Origin: Octopus sinensis | Taxonomy: Eukaryota | Direction: 5' to 3' | Length of the DNA stretch: 64,000 nucleotides | Assembly (NCBI RefSeq): GCF_006345805.1 | Contig: NC_042997.1 | Coordinates: 106,454,001 to 106,518,000 of the forward strand | Shown here: piece after piece, positions 6,445 through 63,490 of the stretch | How the letters are laid out: each line of letters opens with the position of its first letter | Position numbering within the stretch: the first letter of the stretch is position 1 | Program-made: the position numbers and the translations under genes | Notes under the pieces: generated by a model | Told to the model about the DNA's origin: nothing | Seen by the model: only the letters and a program-made list of their open reading frames with translations | Databases searched by the model: none

Positions 6445-8687
6445 ATGATATACATATTCATTATTATATTTGGTTATTTCTTGAAAATATTTACTTCAGT
6501 GACTGCAAATTGTCAGACAGATTGTCCAATTGTTTGCCACTGTACCGAAGACAAATTAAAACACTGTACAGTAACATGTACTGACAAAATTCTAACTCAA
6601 ATACCCAGTTATTTTCCAGAAAATACGACATCATTAGATCTAAGTCGAAACCACATTAAAAGAATTCCTCCTGATATTATTAGACATTTAAACTTATTAG
6701 AGGTGCTAAAAGTTGACGATAATCTTCTTGAATATTTACTGCCAAACACCTTTCAAGGTTTGTGGTCTTTGAGAGAACTGTCATTGGAATACAACAAACT
6801 AACTATTAATTATTCGTCATTTCCTATAAATCTTTTCCGAAATTTAACTAAAGTGAAAATTCTAAAATTACGAGGTAACACTGTGCACAAAAACACAAAA
6901 CTTATTGATAGAACTATATCTCATCTAACTGCACTGGAAGATTTATACATTACAGGTGGTCAGTACTTTATCTTTGGAGCAGGATATAAGAATTTGACAA
7001 AATTAAAATATATTAATTTTGCCTCAAAAAGAAACAGTTCAGTTATGATATATATTGTAAAATATGCATTTAGAAATGTTCCCAGAATAACCCATTTGAA
7101 TTTAGATTACTGCCACTTACACAGATTAAACGGCTACACATTAGCATTTTTCGAAAATCTGCACCTCCTACGCATTTCATTTAACAATCAAAAGCTGCTG
7201 GAGGAAATTCCACGGACCTTGGAACGTCTAAAATTCCCAAGCAAATTGCAAATATTATATTTTAGTAATATGAAATTATATGTAGGAACTGGCATTATTA
7301 TTAGCGAGCATTTTACAAAGCCTTTACATAAATCTGGATTGAAGAAGATTGTTTTAAATTCAGATCATATTGAAATAATTTCTTGGAATAGCATTCTCTC
7401 CTTGCCCAACACTTTGGAATACGCTTATTTGAGAAACAACCAATTAACATACGGAGAATATATCTTTCAAATTAAGGCTTTACCCAACATTAAATTAATC
7501 GACATTAGCATGACATTATCATATAGAAAGCTACCATTTATTCGAAGTGAATTATTCAATAGCGATATTACATACAGTTATGCAATCCCTAAATCTCTTA
7601 AAACATTCTTACTACAAGGTTGCCACTATCAATTTCCGATACCACCATTCCATATAAAAGATGCAAATGCAATAAGATTAATTAATGCAACGAATAATTT
7701 ATTTTGTCCATGGAGTGGCCCAGTCCGAGGCTTAGAGCAATTACAAATTCTGGATTTAAGTCACAACCAATGCAATAATATCAGCAACGAATTCTTCACA
7801 TATTTCACTGGTCTGCGACTTTTGAATATCGAAAATAACGCAATAGGAATTTCAGGTCAAGTTGCCGAAGAAGGTTTCAGCAAAGCTTTTCTAAATTTAA
7901 CCAGCCTCGAAGAATTACATCTTTCAAATAACCACATTCAATATTTATCAAACAACAGTTTGTTACAGCTGAAAAATCTCAGAATCTTAAATTTACGCAA
8001 CAATTTATTGGAATCATTTGATGTAAAGATTAGTCATATGTTAAATTTATCATATTTAGATTTATCTAAAAACGTTTTACAGGAACTGTCGGAAAACACT
8101 TTTAATGCCATTGAAAAGATATCTGAACACCATAAATTCACTGTCAACATCCAAAGCAATAATTTGAAATGTGGTTGTGCACAAATAAGATTTCTCACTT
8201 GGCTGCACAAAGTACGGAATTCAGGTCGTTTGAAAATAATGTACTCGAAATGTACTCATCCTAACGGAACAGTATGGAAGTTGAAAGGAGATCGGCTTGT
8301 TAGGATCGTAAGCTTTCTGAATCACACTTGTTCAGCCTTGATAGGGATAATAATTGCGATAAGTTTTGGTGTTGTAATACTGATTATATTTCTAGTTGCC
8401 TCACTCATTTACCATTTTAGATGGAAGCTACAATATTTATATTACATGATCCGAGAAAAGTATTCCTACAAACGACTCACTCCCGATGAATATATTTACG
8501 ATGCATTTGTGATTTATGCCGACGAAAATCGAGATTTTGCATTAAATTATTTGATTCCAGAATTGGAAGAAAAAGAAAACTTACGTTTGAATATTCATCA
8601 TCGGGACTTCCCTGTTGGAAAATTGATATCAGAAAATATATTATCAGCAATCCAATCTAGTCGAAAATGTATTATTTTATTAAGCAG
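6445..8687 (+). CDS. Toll-like receptor TLR-A, coding exon 1 (signal peptide, LRRNT, LRRs, LRRCT, TM, N-terminal TIR)
   Basis: 748-aa ORF with a hydrophobic N-terminus, CQTDCPIVCHC cap, many LxxLxLxxN repeats, NNLKCGC...W...C LRRCT, TM segment and TIR boxes YDAFVIY and HHRDFPVG. Ends at an AG|GTAAG donor (phase 2). Confidence 0.95.
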
Positions 8688-8727
8688 GTAAGAAACCCCC
8701 ATTAAAATTATAGCATCCACACACACA

Positions 8728-8758
<31 letters not shown>

Positions 8759-8780
8759 TATCTTCCTAATTTTCAAAGTA

Positions 8781-8997
8781 CGATGGGTTGCTGAAAAACT
8801 CCTGGTTTTAAGGGTACCACGAAAGGCTTGGTTGGAGGCCCAATCTTCCGAGTTCTTTTACAGAGCTTAGAAAAACTGAAGGATCGCAGCAATAAGTGTG
8901 TGAATCTGAGGGGGGAATATGTTGAATAAAATGATGCTTAACTCATCCACTTGTATTTTCTTTTAACCACAGCCAGGAACTTTTCAGCAGCCCCTCG
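8781..8997 (+). mobile_element. Internally deleted mariner-type element (MITE) in the TLR-A intron
   Basis: Imperfect TIRs (ta)cgatgggttgctgaaaaactcctgg and ccaggaacttttcagcagcccctcg. The interior encodes a transposase C-terminus-like LEKLKDRSNKCVNLRGEYVE. Confidence 0.78.
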
Positions 8998-9371
8998 TTC
9001 AAAGCAATTATTAGCATTATTTGTATTATTAACAGATATCACATTCAACACATATTTTGAGTACTAACTATAATATATATTCCTTTCTTTAGCATAATTT
9101 ATTTGACATAAAACAAAAGAATTTAATGCATGGTTTAACTAACTCGGTAATAATTAGAAACATTAACATCACTTAACATTTCCGTGGGTCCGTGTTTAAA
9201 AAAAGTTTTGGATCAAGAAGGATATGTAGAGGGATTAAAAGTGTAAAAGAGTAGCAGTTGTGTAAGGGTGAGTGTGAGTTACGAAAATGTCTGCTACGTC
9301 AAACTGTACTATCTACCCCATGTTCAATATACTCCATAATATTAAAAAGTATATATTATATATATACGTAG

Positions 9372-9995
9372 ATGTGCGTACATGTATGTATGCATGTATG
9401 TATGTCATTTTTCAGCGTATTTCAAGATTTCTTGCCTATAGAGAAAGAACCGTCTTCTAACCTAGATGCTTCATTGGAATTTCAAAGTCGACAACAAGGT
9501 ATTTTTGATTGTATGTATGTATGCATGCATGTATGTATGAATGTATGTACGTATGTATGTATGTATGTATGTTTGTATGTATGTATGTATGTATGTATGT
9601 ATGTATGTATGTACGTACGTACGTATGTATGCACGCATGCATATATGTATGTGTGTGTATGTATGTATTTTGTATGTATGTTTGTATGTATGTATGTATG
9701 TATTTATGTATGTATGTATGTATGCATGTATGTATGCACAGCTTTGTTTTATGCATGTATTCTCATGCATAATGAGAAACTGCTGAAAAGTTTTACACAT
9801 TTCTATAGTTCCAGTGAGAGATTGGATCTGTAGTCTTCAAATTAGCATGTATGTACGTACGTATGTATGCATGCATGCATATATGTATGTGTTTATGTAT
9901 GTATGTATGTGTGTATGTATGTGTGTATGTATGTATGTATGTATGTATGTATGTATGTATGTATGTATGTATGTATGTATGTATGTATGTATGCT
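9372..9995. repeat. Compound (TATG)n microsatellite tracts
   Basis: Read directly; these tracts explain the MYVC/HTYI ORFs here. Confidence 0.95.
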
Positions 9996-10952
9996 AATGC
10001 CAAGAGATACTTTAGGCAATAAACTCCGATATCCAACAACTAACATTATGTCCACTAATTTAAGTATTCCTGGTTTCAGATAAAAATAATAAAGTTTATA
10101 CAAGTATTAAACTATTAGTGACATCTAACTTGGGTAGAATAGTTTTCTCTGACGCTTCTACTGTAAAGGGATAATCTATTTGTTCAACATGATTTTGGCA
10201 AAATTCACTCAAATAGATTACTCTTGCATTGGTGTCATTTGAAATTGCTTAGGATATTCACTCTCGTATTACGCTACAATACAACATTGCACACAGTCCT
10301 GTATCTAATATTGCCAAAATATCTGGACAGCTTAACATTCTTAAGCTGTAATTATGATATAAAACTTGTCTTTGAAGTCCTTAGTTGCTCTTTAACAGAT
10401 TCCGAAATGCCACCAATATCGTCGGTTGATTCAGAATTTTGTTGTCTCCTGATTTCCGGCAGTTTCTACTAGTCATCATCTTTCTACTAACGTGAAAATT
10501 GCAATTAATAGACTGTTTCCACAACACATTTTACATTTACAGTATGGAGTAACGGTCACCTACCAGGTTTCAATGGGAGTGGAAGTTCAAAAATTCAAGA
10601 ATATGTCGAAATATTACATCTGCACATTTTCTATTGAACAATTGTTAAGAGTCTCTAAAACTTCGCACCTCATAGGAACTGGAACAGTTCAAATTTAGGC
10701 ATATATCTTTATGCGAACGGAATTACAAAATATATTGCACAATAAAGTGCAGCAAGTTGAGTCGTAGAAGTTTAACAAAAATATTTCTGCCTAATCAGCA
10801 CACCGAGTACATCTGATAATATAAAATAATACTTGGGAAAATGAACATTAGGAAACTACAAATAGCAATATTTATTAGAAGTCCATTTGAAGAATTAAGA
10901 GACTATTTCAATACAGAATTGTTCATTGATATTTTATTATGTTCTCTTGCAG

Positions 10953-11193
10953 ATATTTTGTGGAAAGTAAATGGTGTATGTTTGAATATAACTTAGCTAA
11001 AATGGAATATATTCATACCGAAAGAAATATAGTAATTATTGTGGTACTGGAGCAGGTACCACACAGACAGCTGCCATTACCAATTCTTGAACAGATAAAG
11101 AATCAGAGTTACATTGAATTTCCAAAAGAAAATGAGATTGCTCAAGAAATGTTCTGGAAAAATCTAAAACATTCTATACAGCTAAAAGATTAA
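10953..11193 (+). CDS. TLR-A coding exon 2 (C-terminal TIR); spliced product 827 aa
   Basis: Acceptor ttctcttgcAG|A completes the Arg codon (AG+A). Continues YFVESKWCMFEYNLA...SYIEFP...FWKNLK to TAA, with AATAAA at ~11266. Confidence 0.93.
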
Positions 11194-11652
11194 TGTATTT
11201 GAATTTGTTATAATTACAATTTACAGTCATCAAGAAAAGATGCTTATAATTTTAATAAGGTAGGCAATAAAATATTTTGAACTTTGGAATTGTTATTCTT
11301 GACTATTAAAATACTAGAATGGATATGAAAGTTAATTTGCACAAGAATTAGTAAAGATTACTTTAAGAGTGGATCGACAGATGTGAGTATCTTATTAAAA
11401 TGCTCAAGATAAACTACTATTTTATGAGCTAAAGCAAACTAGCTAATTTAATTAATTACTACAGATGTTGGATATCAATAATAATGATGCAGTATATTGA
11501 TATGTATTATACAATTAATACAAATTTAATTAATGTAAAATCTTTGATCTATGTGTTGAATTTGGTGTCAGGAAGCGAGGAAAACAATGCACATGCAGAA
11601 CTAGTAATAAGATTTCCTGCAGGTGTAAATTTTGAATAAAAGAAACAAGATA

Positions 11653-11714
<62 letters not shown>

Positions 11715-12325
11715 TGTGTGTGTGTGTGTGTGTTTGTGTGTGTGTCAGTTAAAAATAGCGACATAAAATAATCGTTGCTTTGATGCATTTGTCCTTGATT
11801 TTTCAACTGACTGGAAATGATCTTCTGCACCAAAACGTAAATTTGTCGAACTGACTGATATATTATAATAATGACCCAATAACCAGAGATGTGACAAAAA
11901 GCCTTGCGGGCAAAGGAGAAGTTATCTATTTACAACAGGAGCCGTGTTTGCAACGAATAATAATTAGCATATCCAATCTAAATTCGATATGATGTTTAGA
12001 ACGCCTTGAATTTCATGAAACGTACCAAGTAAGGACGGACTATATCGGCTGACCGAATGAGAGTCTGCAGCGGTGGATGGCATTATCATATTACGTGATT
12101 TCACTGTTGATTGCGGATCATCAGTTATACCCAAACTCTTCTCTATATAAGTGTAGATTAAAATATATTCAGTGACATACTTAACGTGTTTAGCAAACCC
12201 TTTACAATAGTTATTGTCACTGTACGAGTTCCCAGTGACAAGCGGGGAAAGGGCGGAAAGGAAGGTAAATAAATGCTTTCGAAGACAACAGGCCTGTACA
12301 TAAGATCCTTACTGTACTTACTGTA

Positions 12326-12742
12326 CAAAGAGATCAAAGAGGGTCACGAAAGAGATCAAAGAGGGTGCCGAAAGAGATCAAAGAGGGTGCCGAAAGAGAC
12401 CAAAGAGGGTGCCGAGAGAGATCAAAGAAGGTGCCGAAAGATATCAAAGAGGATGCCGAAAGAGATCAAAGAATTTCCCGAAAGAGACCAAAAAGGCTGC
12501 TGAAAGAGATCAAAGAGGCTGCCGAAAGAGATCAAAGAGGCTGCCGAAAGAGATCAAAGAGGGTGCCGTAAAAATCAAAGAAGGTGCCAAAAGAGATCAA
12601 AGCGCGTGCCGAAAGAGATCAAAGAGGATGCCGATTGAGATCAAAGAGGGTCCCGAAAGACATCAAAAAGGCTGCCGAAAGAGATCAAAGAGGAGTCCCG
12701 AAAGAGATCAAAGAGGTTGCCGAAAGAGATCAAAGAGGAGTC
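12326..12742 (+). repeat. Minisatellite, ~22-bp unit (gaaagagatcaaagagggtgcc), roughly 19 degenerate copies
   Basis: Read directly. A unit length not divisible by 3 explains the similar ORFs in all three + frames. Confidence 0.9.
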
Positions 12743-13284
12743 CCGTGTTGTGTAAGCGGGTGTGGCTACAATGATGTGCCGGTTACTTGATACAGGAATT
12801 CTCGCAGGTTGAGCTTGCTGTTAACCATGGTGACGTATTCACAAACAGCGTGAAGTTAAACCACAGCGAAGTTGCTGTGTATGTAGAGATGTTGGCGTCG
12901 TTAAGATGGAGACAACGGAGATGGAGGCAACGTTAAGATAAAGGCGACGAAGGTGGAGCTCCGGAAATACTGCTGGTAGTGTGTGTCGCTGAACTGGCTG
13001 TCACTGGAACTGGCTGTGTCACTCTGTGGTCAGTGGTCTAGAACCAAAGACGCTCGCCTCGATGAATCGTGTTTTGTAGCAAATTATAGGCTCAAACGGA
13101 GCGTAAGAAAAACTGTGTCACAGGACCTTATCATAAGGCTGCGATTGGTTGTATTGCACATTGGCGCGTAATACAGCAAGAGACAAACTGCGCCAATACC
13201 AATCAATTAGAGTAGTGGATGCAACAGGGTCCAAACGGCCGAAGGTTAGCTGTTATCTGCTACGTCTGTATTTATGTTATATAT

Positions 13285-13869: not shown

Positions 13870-14104
13870 AAGGCGGCGAGCTGGCAGAAACGTTAGCACG
13901 CCGGGCGAAATGCTTAGCGGTATTTCGCCTGTCGTTACGTTGTGAGTTCAAATTCCGCCGAGGTCGACTTTGCCTTTCATCTTTTCGTGGTCGATAAATT
14001 AAGTACCAGTTGCGCACTGGGGTCGATGTAATCTACTTAATACCTATGTCTGTCCTTGTTTGTCCTCTCTATGTTTTGCCCCTTGTGGGTAATAAAGAAA
14101 TAGG
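13870..14104 (+). mobile_element. SINE family A (tRNA-derived head)
   Basis: aaggcggcgagctggcagaa...gagttcaaattcc (B-box-like)...ttcatc...gtcgataaattaagtaccag; further copies elsewhere in the window. Confidence 0.8.
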
Positions 14105-14181
14105 TAATGTAATATGTAATAAGTAAATAAAAGCGGGGTTGCTATGTTATGTGTATAAATAAGACAGCAAGGAAAAATTTC

Positions 14182-14910
14182 GGATCTTTTCCTTTTGAAC
14201 AGCACATGTCAACACAATTTCCAGTTAACTAAACACTTCAAAACTTCTTATACTGGTAGAATGTGTCAAAATAAAGCATTTTTTTCTCTTGGCTTTCTTG
14301 AGAAAATTGTAATTTGTTTGTTTAACGTAGTTTAATTTTTCGAATTTTAACCAATGAATCGCCTCTAGTGAGCTAAAATCATTTGCTGCGTCTAAAACTG
14401 AGACAACATCCTGTCACTAACCCTAACCCTAACCCTAACCCTAACCCTAATTTTTTTTTTCTTAATTGTTAAATTAATTTAATTGTTACACATGTCAAAA
14501 AAAACGGAAGTCTAAAACGAAAGCAATGGAAAATAATTTAAACAATTAACAAACAAAATAATTCTATAAATTTATACACACGCTTTCCGTATACGTACAC
14601 GCGTAACAATTAAATTAATTTAACAATTAAGAAAAAAAAAATTAGGGTTAGGGTTACGGTGAGGGTTAGGGTTAGTGACAGGATGTTGTCTCAGTTTTAG
14701 ACGCAGCAAATGATTTTAGCTCACTAGAGGCGATTCATTGGTTAAAATTCGAAAAATTAAACTACGTTAAACAAACATATTACAATTTTCTCAAGAAAGC
14801 CAAGAGAAAAAAATGTTTTATTTTGACACATTCTACCAGTATAAGAAGTTTTGAAGTGTTTAGTTAACTGGAAATTGTGTTGACATGTGCCGTTCAAAAG
14901 GAAAAGATCC
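14182..14910. mobile_element. Foldback MITE with ~308-bp arms, internal telomere-like repeats and an 8-bp TSD
   Basis: Arms 14182-14489 and 14603-14910 are near-perfect inverted repeats with GGATCTTTTC termini. AAAATTTC flanks both sides. (CCCTAA)5 lies at 14421-14450. Confidence 0.92.
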
Positions 14911-14929
14911 AAAATTTCTTATATCAAAG

Positions 14930-27348: not shown

Positions 27349-27586
27349 TTAACCTTCTCGTATACACTTTTTAAGATTATTCCAGAAAACATCACTTGTC
27401 TTCGCGTTGTCCGTTGGAAAACATATATAACTCTGTGTTTTGACTTGATGTTGTAATTGTAGAGGTAGAATTTCTACAGAGAATTCTTCGAGCATTATGA
27501 CAATTACCAAATCTCTTTCAGTGTGGACACATTCCATTTTAGCCATGTTATATTCAAACATACACCATTCACTTGCCAAAAAGTTC
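27349..27586 (-). CDS. TLR-B coding exon 2 (C-terminal TIR); spliced product 824 aa
   Basis: Acceptor tttaatttcAG|G completes Arg, then NFLASEWCMFEYNMAKME...SYICFP...FWNNLK to stop. Paralogous to TLR-A exon 2. Confidence 0.9.
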
Positions 27587-32980: not shown

Positions 32981-33355
32981 GGCACAAGGCCTGAAATTTA
33001 GAGGAGGAGGAATAGTCGATTATATCGACCTCAGTGTTTCACTGGTATTTAATTTATTGATCCCGAAAGATGAAAAGCAAAGTCGACCACGGCAAAATTT
33101 AAACTCAGAATGTAGAGGCAGACGAAATACCTATTTGTTTACTACCCACAAGGGGCTAAACACAGAGAGGACAAACAAGGACAGACAAACAGATTAAGTC
33201 GATTATATCGACCCCAGTCCGTAACAGGTACTTATTTAATCGACCCCGTAAGGATGAAAGGCAAAGTCGACCTCGGCGGAATTCGAACTCAGAACGTAAC
33301 GGCAGACGAAATACCTTATGCATTTCGCCCGGCCTGCTAACGATTCTGGCAACTC
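32981..33355 (-). mobile_element. SINE family A, dimeric form
   Basis: Two gcaaagtcgacc...aactcagaa units in the same layout as 63104-63490. Confidence 0.8.
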
Positions 33356-34850: not shown

Positions 34851-35075
34851 CCCTTCTTCTAAAAAGACAAGGCCTGAAATTTGGCGGGGACTAGAAATTT
34901 GGGAGGGCACTAGTCGATTACCTCGACCCCAATGTTTCACTGGTACTTATTTCATCGACCCCAAAAGGATGAAAGGCAAAGTTAACCTCGGCGGAATTTG
35001 AACTCAGAACGTAGCGACAGGCCAATTACTAGGCATTTCGTCCAGCGTGCTAACGATTCTGCCGCTCGCCGCCTT
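34851..35075 (-). mobile_element. SINE family A
   Basis: Reverse complement of aaggcggcgagc...gagttcaaattcc. Confidence 0.8.
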
Positions 35076-38501: not shown

Positions 38502-40738
38502 CTGCTCAGTAAAATAAGACATTTTCGACTCGATTGGATAGCAAACAATATATTTTCAGCAATCTGCTTCCCTGCAGGAAAATCTCGATGATGGATATTC
38601 AGTTTAAACGTATCCTTTTCTTCAAGTTCTGGAATTAGATATTCAACAACACAACCACGATCTTCTTCTGCATAAGATACAAAAGCGTCATAAAGATATT
38701 CCCCAGTTTGTATTCTCTGATATGCGTATCGTTCTCGGATCATGTAATACAAATATCGTAGTTTCCATCTAAAATGATAAACAAGAGCTCCAACAGAAAA
38801 GCAACCCAGAAGCACAATAAGACATGTTACAGCGATAATTATACCGATAAATGATGAACACCTATGGTTAAGATAGGTTATAATCAAAGGAAGCCGACTG
38901 TCTGTCAACTCCCACACTGTTCCGTTAGGATGAGTACATTTCGAGTACATTATTTTCAAACGACCTGAATTCCGTACTTTGTGCAGCCAAGTGAGAAATC
39001 TTATTTGTGCACAACCACATTTCAATTTATTGCTTTCTATGTTAACAGTGAATTTATGGTGTTCAGATATCTTTTCAATAGCATTAAAAGTGTTTTCCGA
39101 CAGTTCCTGTAAAACGTTTTTAGATAAATCTAAGTATGATAAATTTAACATATGACTAATCTTTACATCAAAGGATTTCAATAAATTGTTGCGTAAATTT
39201 AAGATTCTGAGATTTTTCAGCTGTAACAAACTGTTGTTTGATAAATATTGAACGTGGTTATTTGAAAGATGTAATTCTTCGAGGCTGGTTAAATTTAGAA
39301 AAGCTTTGCTGAAACCTTCTTTGGCAACTTGACCTGAAATTCCTATTGCGTTATTTTCGATATTCAAAAGTCGCAGACCAGTGAAATATGTGAAGAATTC
39401 GTTGCTGATATTATTGCATTGGTTGTGACTTAAATCCAGAATTTGTAATTGCTCTAAGCCTCGGACTGGGCCACTCCATGGACAAAATAAATTATTCGTT
39501 GCATTAATTAATCTTATTGCATTTGCATCTTTTATATGGAATGGTGGTATCGGAAATTGATAGTGGCAACCTTGTAGTAAGAGTGTTTTAAGAGATTTAG
39601 AGATTGTAAAACTGTAAGTAGTATCCCTATTGAGTAATTTATAACGAAATAATGGAAGGTTTTTATGTGATAACGTCGTACTAATGTCAATTAATTTAAT
39701 GTTGGTTAAAGTCTTGATTTCAAGCAAATATTTTCCATATGTTAATATATTATTTCTCAAATATGCGTATTCCAATGTTTTGGGCAAAGAAGAAATAAAA
39801 TTGGGCTCAATATATTCCAGTCTGTTATAATTAAACTCAAATCTTTTCAGTGATGTATATTTTAAACAAGATGCTTCCGGTGTAAATAATGGAAATCCAC
39901 GGTTATTCCCATCATTGATATTATTGAGAACAAGATATTCAAGATGATAACTTGACAAGAAACTTTTGAAGAAATGGATGTATCCAACGTGAATTTTATT
40001 ATATGAAATATCTAGAACTCTCAGATTATTTAAATGTCTAAAAGTTTCTACTCTAATTGCACTTATTTGAGAATAACTGAGATTCAAAGAGACAATATGC
40101 AGTGTATTTCTAAAGCAAATGTCCGTGAGAAAAGACATTTGTGAGCTGTTTCGTTTTGTAGCAAAGCTAACATACTTTAATTTTGACAGTTTTGCATATG
40201 CCGCTCCAAAATGCGAATCTATAGAACCTGTCATATATAATTGTTCCAGTGAAGTTAAATGAGAAATAGTTTTATCGATATAGGTCGTAGATATGTGTAA
40301 TAAGTTACCTCGTAATTTCAGAATTTTCACTTTTGTTAAATTTTGGAACAGGTTTATAGGAAAGGATTTATAAGTCATAGTTAGTCGGTTGTACTCTAAC
40401 GAGAGTTCTCTCAAAGACCACAAACCTTGAAAGGTGGTCGGTTGAAAACGTTCAAGGAGATTATCGTCAAGTTTTAGCACCTCTAATAAATTCAAATGTT
40501 TCAAACTATCCGTTGGAATACTTTTAATACGATTTCGACTTAAATCTATTACTGTAGTATTCTTTGGAAAAGAATCGGGTGATTGGGTTAGATTTTGATC
40601 TTTACAGATTGCAGTACAGCGGTTAAATTTAATCTCAGTACAGTTGCAAACATCAGGGCAGTCCGTTTGACAATTCGCAGTCACTTTAATAAACATTTTC
40701 ATGCAGTAAGCAAAAGCAATAATGAACGTCCTCTTCAT
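38502..40738 (-). CDS. Toll-like receptor TLR-B, coding exon 1
   Basis: 746-aa ORF with the same architecture as TLR-A (CQTDCPDVCNC cap, LRRs, LRRCT, TM, YDAFVSY, HHRDFPAG). Donor AG|GTAAAT, phase 2, at the same site as TLR-A. Confidence 0.95.
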
Positions 40739-49267: not shown

Positions 49268-49489
49268 CACTGATGAATTCGAGGGTTTCGCTTATTTGCG
49301 AGTTGATATCTTAATTTCACAGGAGTATGAATATGGTGATATTTAAAAAAAACGAATTAATTCAGTTCAATTAAAAAGTATGGGTAAGCAACGCATTGTC
49401 AACCACACCATAATTTGTGAAACAATTTATCTGCGCGCAAGATATGCGTCGCCCCTCCAATGCCTTTTGTTTTTTGTCACTGAATTTAT

Positions 49490-49898
49490 ATTAGCTTAAT
49501 TCATATCAATATACAGCATGGTTATTGTTAATATACAACATCTGTAGTAATTAATTAAAATAGCTAATTTGTTTTAGTTCATAAAGTAGCATAGCTTGTA
49601 CACTTTAATAAGATACCCACATCTGTCTTTTCACTCTTAAAGTAATCTTTATCAATTCTGGTGCAAATTAACTTTCATATGCATACCAATATCTTAACAG
49701 TATCATAAATAACAATACTAAAGTTCAAAATAATTTAATACCTACCTTTTTAAATTATAAACATTTTTCTTGATGACTGTAAATTGCACTTATTGCAAAT
49801 TTAAATACATCAATCTTCTAGCTGTATAGAATGTTTTAGAATGTCCCAGAATATTTCTTGAGCAATCTTATTTTCTTTTGGAAATTCAATGTACCTCT
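49490..49898 (-). pseudogene. TLR-C remnant: last ~28 codons of a TLR-A-like terminal exon (49810-49898) plus homologous 3' UTR
   Basis: YIEFPKENKIAQEIFWDILKHSIQLED* versus TLR-A YIEFPKENEIAQEMFWKNLKHSIQLKD*. About 300 bp of 3' UTR aligns to 11194-11520. Confidence 0.88.
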
Positions 49899-51757
49899 TG
49901 AAAAGGATGGCACACTCATAGGAAATCCAATGAGGGTAAGTGAAATACTGAATGAGCAATTCAAGAGTGTTTTCACTCCACCCCTTGGGCATTTCCAAAT
50001 CACCAATCCAACTGACTTCTTTACCACTGCAGATATAAAATCAGAGGCAGCGATGATTGATTACATCAATATAAAGGAAGACGATGTAATAAAGGCTATA
50101 GATGAAATGAAAACAAACTCAGCTACTGGCCTCGATGGATTCCCGGCAATCCTCCTAAAAGTATGTAAGAGAGTCCTAGCAAGACCACTGCAGTTCCTCT
50201 TTCAGAGCTTCATTGCAACTGGCAAACTTCCAAGAAAACTGAAGGAAGGTAAAATATGTCCTATTCATAAAGGAGGTAGCAGAGCGGAGGCCAAGAACTA
50301 CAGACCTATCTCTCTGACCTCACACATCAGCAAGGTCATGGAACGAATAGTCAGAAGGAAACTGATCACCTTCCTTGAAGAAAATGACTTGCTGCCTGAC
50401 ACCCAACATGGTTTCCGACCAGGAAGAAGGTGCTTAACTCAGCTCCTACAACACTATGACTGGGTGCTGAAACGACTGCTCAACCACTCAAATGTGGAAG
50501 TGATATATCTCGACTTTGCAAAGGCCTTTGATAAAGTCGATCATGGAATGATATGTCACAAACTGCGTGATCTTAGCATAGTTGGAAAACTGGGAGAATG
50601 GCTTCATGACTTTCTGAAGGATAGAAGTCAGGTGGTAGTAGCCAATGGGGCCACTTCCATTAACACGCAAATAGTAAGCGGTGTTCCGCAGGGCACTGTT
50701 TTGGGACCACTACTGTTCATAATGGACCTCTCAGACATGCCCTCAGCCACGCAGAGAGCCACGATCACAAGTTATGCAGATGATACAAAAGTTTCACAGG
50801 CAATACAGAACCCTGAAGACACTAAATGCCTGCAATGTGAGCTGAACAAAATATACAAGTGGGCTGAAAAGAATAACATGCAGTTCAATGCTGAAAAGTT
50901 TCAAGCTTTATGCTATCAGCATGCAAAACTAAATGCAATACCCAATGAATACACTGGACCTGGAGGAATTGCAATCCCAGAGGCACAATCAGTGCGTGAC
51001 CTGGGTATTTACATGAGTGATGACGCAACCTTTCGTGTACATGTTGCTAAATTGGCAATGAAATGTAGACGACTGGCCGGATGGATTCTTAGAACCTTTA
51101 GAACAAGAGAACAAGAAACCATGATGGTCCTCTGGAGGACACTTGTCCTAAGCCACTTTGACTATTGCTCTCAGCTATGGTCACCATCCAGTGTCAAGTT
51201 GATCACAGAACTTGAAGCGATTCAACGTAGCTACACGAAGAAGATAGCCTCTGTGCAGCATATAAGCTACTGGGAAAGACTCAAGAGATTAAAACTCTAT
51301 TCCTTGGAGCATAGGCGAGAAAGATATGCCATAATATACACCTGGAAGATCCTGGAAGGACTCGTCCCAAACTTTGGCATCGAGAGTTACACAAATGCCA
51401 GAACTGGGCGCCACTGCGTGGTGCCAAGGACTCCAAATTTGCCATCAAGATGTAGGACAAGATACTGTGATAGCCTGGGCTTCCGAGGCCCACAGCTCTT
51501 CAATATCCTCCGGAAGAACCTAAGAGACCTGCATGGGGTGGATGCAGATGTCTTTAAAATGAAACTGGATCTCTTCTTGTCAGATATCCCAGATGAACCA
51601 ACTTCACGGCAGGAGGTACAGATGAGGGCAGCTGCATCGAACTCTCTCATGCACCAAATGGCAGTTGCTAAAAAGCATTCGTGAAGTAAAACCATGTAGC
51701 AACACCAGATGGCGGTGCCCTAGCATGGCCACAGCTCGTGAGCTGAATCTAGATAAA

Positions 51758-52739: not shown

Positions 52740-53100
52740 TTCTACTGCAATTGTTTCGGTGGCACTACTCGATTACATCGCCCACAGTGCTCAACTACCA
52801 CAGTGTTCAAATGGTACTCATTTTATCGCTCCCGACATGATGAAAGGCAAAATCTACTCCGGCTGAATTTGAACTGAGAACGTAAAGCTGGAAGAAATAC
52901 TATAATGTATTTTGTCCAATGTGCTAACGATTCTGCCAACTCGCTGACTTTATCGTACTAATCCTTTCTTTCTACTACTAGAACAAAATCATAAATTTGG
53001 TGGTAGTCGATTGCAGCGACCACAAAACTCAACTGATGCTTTTTTTTTTTTCATCAACCCTGAAAAGATAAAAGGCAAAGTTGACCTCAGTGGAACTTGA
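52740..53100 (-). mobile_element. Two diverged SINE family A copies
   Basis: gatgaaaggcaaa...gaatttgaactgagaacgta...gctaacgattctgcca. Confidence 0.65.
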
Positions 53101-63103: not shown

Positions 63104-63490
63104 AAGGCGGCGAGCTGGCAGAAACGTTAGCACGCCGGGCGAAATGCGTAGCCGTATTTCGTCTGCCGTTACGTTCTGAGTTCAAATTCCGCCGAGGTCG
63201 ACTTTGCCTTTCATCCTTTCGGGGTCGATTAAATAAGTACCAGTTACGCACTTCGACTTAATCCGTTTGTCTGTCCTTGTTTGTTCTCTCTGTGTTTAGC
63301 CCCTTGTGGGTAGTAAAGAAATAGGTATTTCGTCTGCTGCTACGTTCTGAGTTCAAATTCCACCGAGGTCGACTTTGCCTTTCATCCTTTCGGGGCCAAT
63401 AAATTAAGTACCAGTTGCGTACTGAGGTCGATCTACTCGACTGGGCACCCTCCCCCAAAATTTCGGGCCTTGTGCATAGAGTAGAAAAGA
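63104..63490 (+). mobile_element. SINE family A, dimeric form
   Basis: Full head plus a second partial unit restarting at gtatttcgtctgc. Confidence 0.82.

What the first reader, a model, noticed from the sequence alone, without database searches (positions are those of the whole stretch)
7590..8278. Near-identical ~0.7 kb tract shared by otherwise divergent TLR-A and TLR-B (gene conversion)
Seen: TLR-A ~7590-8278 matches TLR-B ~39600-38912 with only about a dozen mismatches by eye, and no mismatch over ~7610-7866, synonymous sites included. The N-terminal LRRs and the TM/TIR regions differ at many residues and have indels. The tract covers the C-terminal LRRs and LRRCT. Known: vertebrate TLR1/TLR6 show conversion tracts between adjacent paralogs. 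Inference: recent ectopic conversion between the inverted paralogs homogenises the membrane-proximal (possibly dimerisation) surface while the distal LRRs diversify.
Basis: partly seen in the sequence, partly recalled or inferred. Interest (0 to 1): 0.7.

Follow-up and report, generated by a model that had tools for sequence, protein, structure and literature searches.

The report
Octopus TLR paralogs share converted tract
Two ancient Toll-like receptor genes of Octopus sinensis, about 30 kb apart, keep an almost identical 0.67-kb stretch encoding the membrane-proximal leucine-rich repeats because one copy repeatedly overwrites the other (gene conversion), as is known for vertebrate TLR1/TLR6.

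Summary
The window is Octopus sinensis chromosome CM016859.1. It holds two intact two-exon TLR genes in convergent orientation: TLR-A (6445-8687 + 10953-11193, +) and TLR-B (40738-38502 + 27586-27349, -, the annotated 'toll-like receptor 4').

A 7607-8273 matches B 39582-38916 with 10 mismatches in 667 nt, including a perfect 260-nt core (7607-7866). Synonymous divergence (dS) is 0.04-0.05 in the tract, against 0.38-1.6 in the rest of the exon. No permutation out of 20,000 gave an identical run longer than 55 nt.

Orthologous DNA from O. vulgaris, O. bimaculoides and Argonauta hians shows this is concerted evolution, not sequence constraint:
- In TM/TIR and the N-terminal LRRs, sequences group by paralog type, so the A/B split predates the Octopus/Argonauta split.
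- In the tract they group by lineage. Informative sites, species:type, are 120:0 against Argonauta and 12-15:0 against O. bimaculoides; in TM/TIR they are 9:43 and 0:48-109.
- Between-species dS in the tract is normal.

The tract covers LRR13-20 and most of the LRRCT, and stops before the TM and TIR.

This is a new example of a known process. It differs from mammalian TLR1/6 in that TM/TIR escape conversion. Whether the shared tract is a dimerisation surface is untested.

The parts
6445..8687 (+). TLR-A coding exon 1: signal peptide, LRRNT, 20 LRRs, LRRCT, TM, first third of the TIR domain. Ends at the splice donor CAG|GTAAGA.
   Evidence: ORF; Pfam LRRNT/LRR_8/TIR, TIR profile positions 1-65 of 179; donor sequence; AlphaFold model with pLDDT 85.8 and 20 LRR strands.
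10953..11193 (+). TLR-A coding exon 2: rest of the TIR domain plus the stop codon. Acceptor is TTGCAG|A. The spliced product is 827 aa and intact.
   Evidence: tblastn and translation; 97-99% identical to the intact A-type exon 2 copies of O. bimaculoides.
38502..40738 (-). TLR-B coding exon 1, with the same architecture as TLR-A exon 1.
   Evidence: ORF; Pfam; spliced to 27586-27349 it translates exactly to P0003, 'toll-like receptor 4 [Octopus sinensis]'.
27349..27586 (-). TLR-B coding exon 2: rest of the TIR domain plus the stop codon.
7607..8273 (+). Conversion tract in TLR-A (aa 389-610): LRR13-LRR20 and the LRRCT up to about 20 residues before its last Cys and the TM helix.
   Evidence: 10 mismatches in 667 nt, dS 0.046; lineage-wise clustering; LRR mapping from the model.
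38916..39582 (-). Conversion tract in TLR-B, the counterpart of A 7607-8273.
7607..7866 (+). Youngest sub-tract: 260 nt identical to B 39582-39323. It carries two synonymous changes (7737 G, 7785 C) found in both O. sinensis copies and in none of the other seven sequences that cover these sites.
7399..7606 (+). Older, partly homogenised shoulder (LRR11-12), counterpart B 39790-39583. A-B dS is 0.38. It groups by type within Octopus but by lineage against Argonauta.
49483..49899 (-). Relic of a further A-type exon 2 (aa 52-80 plus 3' UTR), 85% identical to 11105-11526. It is cut off at 49899, and a reverse-transcriptase ORF (49858-51684, +) overlaps that end on the opposite strand. It also marks the right end of the segment (25119-49898) that is inverted relative to other octopuses.
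   Evidence: (I12, I19).

Best explanation
TLR-A and TLR-B are two ancient paralog types of a single-cysteine-cluster Toll-like receptor. They duplicated before the Octopus/Argonauta split.

A block of exon 1 encodes LRR13-20 plus most of the LRRCT. It is repeatedly overwritten between the copies by non-reciprocal homologous repair, that is, interlocus gene conversion without crossover. As a result the paralogs evolve in concert there, while LRR1-12 and the TM/TIR keep type-specific sequences.

**Shown:**
- the tract, its statistics and its limits;
- the tree conflict between tract and flanks in four species;
- normal between-species dS in the tract;
- nested ages: a perfect 260-nt core, 2.5% divergence in the rest of the tract, and an older shoulder at 7399-7606;
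- an independent and older episode in Argonauta.

**Inferred:**
- High identity inside the block seeds each new event. The 20-50% divergent flanks stop heteroduplex extension. Selection removes chimeras that would swap the fast-evolving ligand-side LRR6-10 or the type-specific TM/TIR. Together these keep the 3' limit near 8274-8285 in all three Octopus species.
- The functional result is two receptors with different ligand-side and signalling parts but one common membrane-proximal ectodomain module. That module probably serves receptor pairing or a shared co-factor.
For: **Tract statistics.** dS is 0.046 in the tract against 0.38-1.6 elsewhere. The identical run is 260 nt against at most 55 in 20,000 permutations; Fisher p = 3e-21 on silent codons.

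**Neighbour-joining trees by segment.**
- TM/TIR: A clade including Argonauta A, 100% bootstrap.
- Mid-LRR segment: the same grouping, 100%.
- First N-terminal segment: the three Octopus A copies group at 100%, but Argonauta A joins them in only 51% of replicates.
- Tract: Argonauta A with Argonauta B, 100%; sinensis/vulgaris copies together, 82%.

**Four-taxon informative sites, species:type.**
- Tract: 12-15:0 (vs O. bimaculoides) and 120:0 (vs Argonauta).
- TM/TIR: 0:48-109 and 9:43.
- LRR6-10: 1-4:125-137 (vs O. bimaculoides).
- Third codon positions alone give the same result, p = 1e-10 to 1e-21.

**dS in the tract.** Between species it is 0.11-0.15 (Osin-Obim) and 1.4-1.5 (Osin-Argonauta) for any pairing of types, which is not lower than the orthologous TM/TIR values of 0.05-0.14 and 0.84-0.94. 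Within species, A-B dS is 0.038, 0.083-0.086 and 0.31.

**Replication.** The same low-divergence block, with the same 3' limit, appears in O. sinensis, O. vulgaris and O. bimaculoides. Derived synonymous states at 7737 and 7785 are shared by both O. sinensis copies only.

**Gene integrity and precedent.** Both genes are intact. Vertebrate precedent: PMC2077338 and PMC3125219.
Against: - No reads or population data were available. The perfect identity of the 260-nt core, and the two shared derived sites, could be partly inflated by short-read polishing of a long-read assembly.
- There is no rise in GC3 in the tract, so no GC-biased-conversion signature. This is weak evidence, because octopus conversion bias is unknown.
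- In O. bimaculoides the within-species A-B tract distance (4-6%) is about the same as the Osin-Obim distance. Post-split conversion in that lineage is therefore only weakly supported (bootstrap 64%).
- That assembly is full of gaps, and its two A-B units might be haplotype copies.
- The selective rationale (shared dimerisation or co-factor module) is untested.
Confidence: 0.9

Rival explanations
1. Assembly or polishing artefact. The tract of one paralog was collapsed onto, or polished with reads from, the other, so the identity is not biological.
For: Only one assembly per species was examined. Exact identity over 260 nt is the kind of detail that short-read polishing can create in regions that are already similar.
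Against: The same block, with the same limits, is seen in four independent assemblies of four species. Both copies sit in frame inside long intact ORFs with unalignable flanks, and the window has no N runs. Polishing cannot turn roughly 30% divergence into 1.5%. B spliced as annotated reproduces the RefSeq protein exactly.
Confidence: 0.03
2. No conversion. The tract is simply under extreme purifying selection, including at synonymous sites, for example because of an overlapping RNA or regulatory element. Old paralogs therefore still look alike.
For: Tract omega is low, 0.04-0.5. Several LRR and LRRCT positions in the tract (for example L535, N572, C576, C578) are invariant or nearly so across TLRs.
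Against: Between-species synonymous divergence in the tract is normal or high: 0.11-0.15 to O. bimaculoides and 1.4-1.5 to Argonauta. There are 120 sites at which both O. sinensis copies differ jointly from both Argonauta copies, and none of the opposite pattern. No Rfam family matches anywhere in the window.
Confidence: 0.02
3. A single segment replacement (double crossover or one conversion) in the Octopus ancestor, followed by ordinary divergence. On this view there is no recurrent or ongoing process.
For: In O. bimaculoides the A-B tract distance is about the same as the between-species distance. The 3' limit is the same in all Octopus species, as one inherited event would give.
Against: Nested ages occur within one gene pair: 0/260 and 10/407 mismatches in the two parts of the tract, and dS 0.38 in the shoulder. 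A-B dS in O. sinensis (0.038) is 3-4 times lower than Osin-Obim tract dS. Derived states are shared only by the two O. sinensis copies. O. vulgaris A-remnant vs B is 0-2% different over 7936-8236 but 7-8% over 7816-7935. Argonauta shows a separate, older homogenisation with different limits.
Confidence: 0.05

Closest known systems
Mammalian TLR1/TLR6 gene conversion (Kruithof et al. 2007, PMC2077338)
   Same: Neighbouring TLR paralogs. N-terminal LRRs group by ortholog. A C-terminal block groups by species because of independent conversions in many lineages, with nearly the same limits in each species. In both cases conversion is read as limiting divergence of one functional module while the ligand-binding part diversifies.
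   Different: In TLR1/6 the block of about 300 aa runs from LRR16-19 through the C-cap and TM into most of the TIR. In octopus it covers LRR13-20 and most of the LRRCT and stops before the TM, and TM/TIR stay deeply divergent (dS about 1.6). The octopus genes are not TLR1-family orthologs: the best PDB sequence hits are TLR7 and TLR3 ectodomains, and identity to vertebrate TLRs is 22-25%. The TIR is split by an intron. In this assembly the genes are convergent, not tandem.
Avian TLR1A/TLR1B and TLR2A/TLR2B conversion (Huang et al. 2011, PMC3125219; Cormican et al. 2009, as cited there)
   Same: Mosaic paralogs with converted and unconverted segments. There are separate events of different age in different segments. 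GENECONV-type tests and segment-wise trees give the same kind of conflict.
   Different: The avian tracts include the TIR (LRR14/15 to TIR) and, for TLR2A/B, also the N-terminus up to LRR8. In octopus only an internal ectodomain block is shared between types A and B. Homogenisation that includes TM/TIR is seen only among B-type copies.
Long-lasting concerted evolution of mammalian gene pairs (PMC2720389)
   Same: Conversion between paralogs sustained across deep species splits, so that paralogs look younger than they are (abstract only).
   Different: That study is a general survey of human gene pairs, judged here from its abstract only.

Membership tests
Toll-like receptor, single-cysteine-cluster (V-type) architecture | Signal peptide, LRRNT, LRR solenoid, one LRRCT, single TM helix, cytoplasmic TIR domain | tested here: met
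   Pfam LRRNT, LRR_8 and TIR. Model with 20 LRR strands, LRRCT and a long helix including the TM segment, pLDDT 85.8. All of the 50 best Foldseek matches listed are TLR ectodomains; the highest TM-score is to TLR3, 0.53. PDB sequence hits include TLR3 and TLR7 and the TLR1/2/6 TIR domains. The TIR is complete after splicing.
Interlocus gene conversion / concerted evolution | Paralogs far more alike in a bounded tract than in the flanks, synonymous sites included, beyond chance | tested here: met
   dS 0.046 vs 0.38-1.6. Identical run of 260 nt vs at most 55 in 20,000 permutations; Fisher p = 3e-21.
Interlocus gene conversion / concerted evolution | Tree conflict: the tract groups paralogs by species, the flanks group them by ortholog | tested here: met
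   Segment NJ trees with bootstrap. Informative sites 120:0 and 12-15:0 in the tract, vs 9:43 and 0:48-109 in TM/TIR.
Interlocus gene conversion / concerted evolution | Tract not unusually conserved between species, which excludes constraint | tested here: met
   Tract dS is 0.11-0.15 (Osin-Obim) and 1.4-1.5 (Osin-Argonauta), at or above orthologous flank values.
Interlocus gene conversion / concerted evolution | Non-reciprocal transfer with identifiable donor and recipient; tract polymorphic in populations | not testable with these tools
   Needs population resequencing or pedigree data. Only one haplotype per species was available.
Interlocus gene conversion / concerted evolution | Both copies verified by reads spanning the tract and the paralog-specific flanks | not testable with these tools
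   No read data. Indirect support comes from four independent assemblies.
TLR1/TLR6-type conversion pattern (vertebrate TLR1 family) | Converted block includes TM and most of the TIR domain | tested here: not met
   TM/TIR 8274-8688: A-B p-distance 0.31, dS 1.57, grouping by type with 100% bootstrap.
TLR1/TLR6-type conversion pattern (vertebrate TLR1 family) | Independent events in several lineages with nearly the same limits | tested here: met
   The same 3' limit (about 8274-8285) in three Octopus species. A separate older block (about 7430-8056) in Argonauta.
TLR1/TLR6-type conversion pattern (vertebrate TLR1 family) | Genes are members (orthologs) of the TLR1/2/6/10 family | tested here: inconclusive
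   Only 22-25% identity to any vertebrate TLR. The ectodomain's best PDB hits are TLR7 and TLR3, while the TIR-only hits are TLR1/2/6. No proper phylogeny was made.

The most novel reading that the evidence does not exclude
The conserved C-terminal LRR block may be more than a passively homogenised patch. It could be the recombination hinge of a small germline cassette system. Octopus genomes hold several A-type and B-type copies, plus truncated pseudogene remnants that still exchange sequence. Among B-type copies, crossovers or conversions starting about 60 nt upstream of the homogenised region join different fast-evolving N-terminal LRR modules to a common 3' half: Osin_B and Ovul_B share 3' halves that are at most 1% different, but their 5' halves come from different old lineages. 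Conversion between A and B types, by contrast, stops before the TM, so the two signalling types stay distinct. On this reading the shared block also lets A and B pair as heterodimers. In the O. sinensis arrangement, a read-through transcript would in addition fold the two inverted tracts into a 667-bp duplex.
Probability: 0.15. Interest if true: 0.75.

Novelty: new member of a known kind. Interest (0 to 1): 0.5.

Why it matters
Cephalopods are reported to have the smallest TLR repertoires among molluscs (PMC10279657). Full-text searches found no report of conversion among octopus TLRs.

The result shows that the domain-restricted concerted evolution described for vertebrate TLR1/6 and avian TLR1/2 also operates in a protostome. 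Here it has a different domain boundary: the ectodomain is converted and TM/TIR are spared.

In practice, whole-gene trees of these octopus TLRs will mis-date the duplications and mis-assign orthologs unless the tract is masked. The tract also marks a candidate shared functional module (pairing or co-factor binding) that chimeric receptors could test. Finally, TLR-A appears intact but has no close protein entry in the database searched, so it may be missing from the O. sinensis annotation.

Tried and rejected
- **GC-biased conversion.** GC3 in the tract is 0.28-0.31, against 0.19-0.36 in the other segments. No signal.
- **Structured RNA or tRNA under the tract or elsewhere.** No Rfam match at gathering score and no ARAGORN hit in the window.
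- **Single-sequence AlphaFold model.** Unusable at pLDDT 41.8. Repeated with a 33-sequence alignment, giving pLDDT 85.8.
- **Direct look-ups of the O. bimaculoides proteins P0004 and P0001.** These gave no contig. Their cluster mates P0039 and P0040 did.
- **Treating O. vulgaris locus L001 as the strict ortholog of the window.** Rejected. Its B gene has a 5' half of the 'Bfrag/B3' lineage, and its non-coding flanks are only 79-87% identical to the window. O. bimaculoides L007 is 89-94% identical around B. Timing statements are therefore made relative to the sampled copies, not to the sinensis/vulgaris speciation.
- **Inversion by crossover inside the tract.** This would swap TM/TIR between A and B. 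Rejected, because both genes keep type-consistent 3' parts and the inverted segment is the whole B gene.
- **The paper on 14 O. sinensis TLRs** (Chen et al. 2024, Fish Shellfish Immunol). Not held in the library.

Full report
**What is in the window.**
The window is eukaryotic. The reverse complement of locus L005 (Octopus sinensis GCA_006345805.1, chromosome CM016859.1) matches window 17349-50738 exactly.

Two long ORFs, 6445-8691 (+) and 40738-38498 (-), both encode a signal peptide, LRRNT, LRRs, LRRCT, TM and the first third of a TIR domain. Both end at a canonical splice donor, CAG|GTAAG or CAG|GTAAA. The rest of the TIR lies in a second exon: 10953-11193 (+) for A and 27586-27349 (-) for B.

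B spliced this way equals the annotated 824-aa 'toll-like receptor 4 [Octopus sinensis]' (P0003) residue for residue. A gives an intact 827-aa protein, but the 5.8-billion-protein collection holds nothing closer to it than an 82-85% O. bimaculoides relative. A therefore seems to be unannotated.

The genes are convergent, with 29.8 kb between the ends of their first exons. A/B homology is confined to the coding exons, and the flanks do not align.

**The observation.**
It holds at the stated place. Inverted repeat I1 (7399-8457 vs 38732-39790, 90%) is the longest in the window.

In a codon alignment, A 7607-8273 and B 39582-38916 differ at 10 of 667 positions.

Nei-Gojobori dS by segment:

| Segment | dS |
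|---|---|
| Tract 7607-8273 | 0.046 |
| Perfect core 7607-7866 | 0 |
| 7399-7606 | 0.38 |
| 6640-6990 | 0.63 |
| 6991-7398 | 1.60 |
| TM/TIR 8274-8688 | 1.57 |

Shuffling the variable sites 20,000 times never gave an identical run longer than 55 nt, against the observed 260. Among codons for identical amino acids, 6 of 213 differ inside the tract and 102 of 292 outside it (p = 3e-21). The single indel, a 2-codon gap, lies in the N-terminal LRR part.

**Related sequences.**
The protein search found A-like and B-like relatives in O. bimaculoides, O. vulgaris and Argonauta hians. Their DNA was fetched and the exons were located by tblastn.

- **O. vulgaris (L001).** SOWAH, then a 5'-truncated A-type pseudogene (aa 457-748, four stops), then B, all on one strand.
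- **O. bimaculoides.** Two A-then-B units in opposite orientation: L007 holds A2 and B2; L006 holds A1, a B fragment and B1. The assembly has many gaps.
- **Argonauta.** One A (next to SOWAH) and one B, 4.8 Mb apart on the same contig and the same strand.

**Conversion, not constraint and not artefact.**
On a codon alignment of 11 sequences, segment-wise distances and bootstrapped NJ trees show the following.

- TM/TIR and the mid-LRR segment group by type. Argonauta A joins the Octopus A copies with 100% support.
- In the first N-terminal segment the three Octopus A copies group at 100%, but the placement of the Argonauta genes is unresolved (51%; informative sites 18:15).
- In TM/TIR, A-B p-distance is about 0.31, while orthologs are 0.03-0.05 apart (Osin-Obim) and 0.19-0.20 apart (Octopus-Argonauta). 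The A/B duplication therefore predates the Octopus/Argonauta split.
- In the tract the grouping flips. Argonauta A pairs with Argonauta B (100%), and all sinensis/vulgaris copies group together (82%). Distances depend on species, not type: 0.015 within O. sinensis, 0.04-0.06 to O. bimaculoides and 0.25-0.28 to Argonauta.

Four-taxon informative sites, species:type:

| Segment | vs O. bimaculoides | vs Argonauta |
|---|---|---|
| Tract | 12-15:0 | 120:0 |
| TM/TIR | 0:48-109 | 9:43 |
| LRR6-10 | 1-4:125-137 | 9:59 |

Third codon positions alone give 73:0 against 6:17 (Osin vs Argonauta, tract vs TM/TIR), with tract-versus-flank Fisher p between 1e-10 and 1e-21 for the four comparisons.

Tract dS between species is not reduced. 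It is 0.11-0.15 to O. bimaculoides and 1.4-1.5 to Argonauta for any type pairing, against 0.05-0.14 and 0.84-0.94 for orthologous TM/TIR. This excludes synonymous constraint.

The same block appears in four independent assemblies, which makes collapse or chimerism very unlikely. Short-read polishing could at most have erased a few differences in the perfect core.

**Anatomy and history of the block.**
Sliding windows show the same profile in O. sinensis, O. bimaculoides and O. vulgaris:

- about 50% A-B divergence up to about 7366;
- about 20% over 7396-7546;
- under 7% over about 7576-8236;
- an abrupt return to about 30% from about 8270.

Type-specific differences restart at 8278-8285 in every Octopus sequence. 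In Argonauta the low block is about 7430-8056 and is older (2-13%; dS 0.31).

Ages are nested in O. sinensis: 0/260 mismatches, then 10/407, then a shoulder with dS 0.38. Two synonymous states (7737 G, 7785 C) occur in both O. sinensis copies and in none of the other seven sequences that cover these sites. So at least one transfer is younger than the coalescence with all sampled relatives.

The 33-sequence AlphaFold model (pLDDT 85.8) has 20 LRR strands.

- The tract (aa 389-610) is LRR13-LRR20 plus the LRRCT, up to about 20 residues before its last cysteine and the TM helix.
- The shoulder is LRR11-12.
- The hypervariable stretch 6991-7398 is LRR6-10. Its omega between orthologs is 0.74-1.47, against 0.04-0.5 in the tract.

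Foldseek and PDB sequence searches return only TLR ectodomains and TIR domains.

**Mechanism.**
The pattern shown is a two-sided patch inside an otherwise old, divergent exon, renewed several times in separate lineages. That is the signature of non-reciprocal homologous repair (gene conversion). A single unequal crossover would leave only one junction.

Three points are inferred.

- Identity inside the block seeds each new event, and the 20-50% divergent flanks halt heteroduplex extension.
- Selection removes products that would homogenise the ligand-side LRRs or the type-specific TM/TIR.
- The common module serves receptor pairing or a shared partner.

Argonauta has genes 4.8 Mb apart and a much older tract. 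That agrees with conversion frequency falling with distance, but it is a single case. No GC3 excess marks the tract.

**Orientation.**
Window 25119-49898, which holds the whole of B, is inverted relative to O. bimaculoides L007 and to the homologous but probably paralogous unit in O. vulgaris L001. The right end of this segment coincides with the truncated end (49899) of the relic A-type exon 2, which a reverse-transcriptase ORF overlaps on the opposite strand.

Head-to-tail A-then-B is therefore the common arrangement. It is not needed for the conversion.

A crossover inside the tract would have swapped TM/TIR between the genes. That has not happened.

**Comparison with what is known.**
Kruithof et al. 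(PMC2077338) and Huang et al. (PMC3125219) describe the same process in mammalian TLR1/6 and avian TLR1A/B and TLR2A/B. There the converted block runs from LRR14-16 through the TM into the TIR. In octopus it ends before the TM, and TM/TIR remain type-specific.

Full-text searches found no report of conversion among octopus or other cephalopod TLRs. A 2024 survey of 14 O. sinensis TLRs could not be read.

**Verdict.**
The finding is real and correctly interpreted. It is a new, well-supported example of a known evolutionary process with a distinctive domain boundary. It is of moderate interest, and it matters in practice for the phylogeny and annotation of cephalopod TLRs.

Noticed in passing
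window 49483-49899 (-) and 49858-51684 (+): Relic of a further A-type TLR exon 2 (aa 52-80 plus 3' UTR, 85% identical to 11105-11526). It is cut off at 49899, where a 608-aa reverse-transcriptase (RVT_1) ORF overlaps it on the opposite strand. This hints at a lost or displaced third TLR copy.
   Followed up: partly
window 25119-49898: The whole TLR-B gene segment is inverted relative to O. bimaculoides (L007 46533-20205) and O. vulgaris (L001). About 420 bp is duplicated in inverted orientation at 11105-11526 and 49898-49483. This is either a real lineage-specific inversion or an orientation error in the assembly.
   Followed up: partly
L001 23417-24280 (O. vulgaris): 5'-truncated A-type pseudogene. 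The junction corresponds to window 6363|7813, inside the tract, and there are four in-frame stops. It is still only 0-2% different from the neighbouring B gene over 7936-8236, so a dead copy still exchanges sequence with a live one.
   Followed up: partly
L001 (Ovul_B), window-equivalent 7856-7933: Six private differences cluster within 78 nt of the O. vulgaris B tract, and three of them equal the Argonauta state. This looks like a micro-conversion from an unsampled donor copy.
   Followed up: no
window 38502-39853 (B 3' part, about A 7336 onward) vs L001, L006 and L007: B-type copies are homogenised over the whole 3' half, including TM/TIR (Obim B1/B2 0.8%, Osin_B/Ovul_B 0-1%). Their 5' halves belong to distinct old lineages: Osin_B resembles Obim_B2, and Ovul_B resembles the Obim B fragment. 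This is a second tier of exchange with a switch point near 7320-7340.
   Followed up: partly
window 6991-7398 / 40192-39791: LRR6-10 is hypervariable. A-B dN is 0.8, and omega between orthologs is 0.74-1.47. This is a candidate ligand-side region under relaxed or diversifying selection.
   Followed up: partly
window 6445-11193 (+): TLR-A is intact (827 aa after splicing), but no protein 90% or more identical to it exists in the protein collection. It is probably missing from the O. sinensis annotation.
   Followed up: partly
window 14175-14495 / 14597-14917: Large foldback: 321-nt arms, 98% complementary, 101-nt loop, lying 3 kb downstream of TLR-A exon 2. Its nature is unknown; it may be a pair of inverted repeat elements.
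   Followed up: no
window 12289-12757; 13870-14106, 33066-33316, 34912-35031, 52783-52902, 63104-63442: A 22-nt minisatellite of about 17-21 copies lies just past TLR-A. A dispersed SINE-like repeat family (about 120-240 nt, 72-96% identity) occurs on both strands. There are many AT, AAT, TC and AGT microsatellites.
   Followed up: no
L003 and L004 (Argonauta hians contig BAAFZT010000002.1): The A-type gene (15.37-15.39 Mb, next to SOWAH) and the B-type gene (20.20-20.23 Mb) are 4.8 Mb apart, and their tract is much more diverged (dS 0.31) than in Octopus. This is consistent with conversion fading as the copies move apart.
   Followed up: partly
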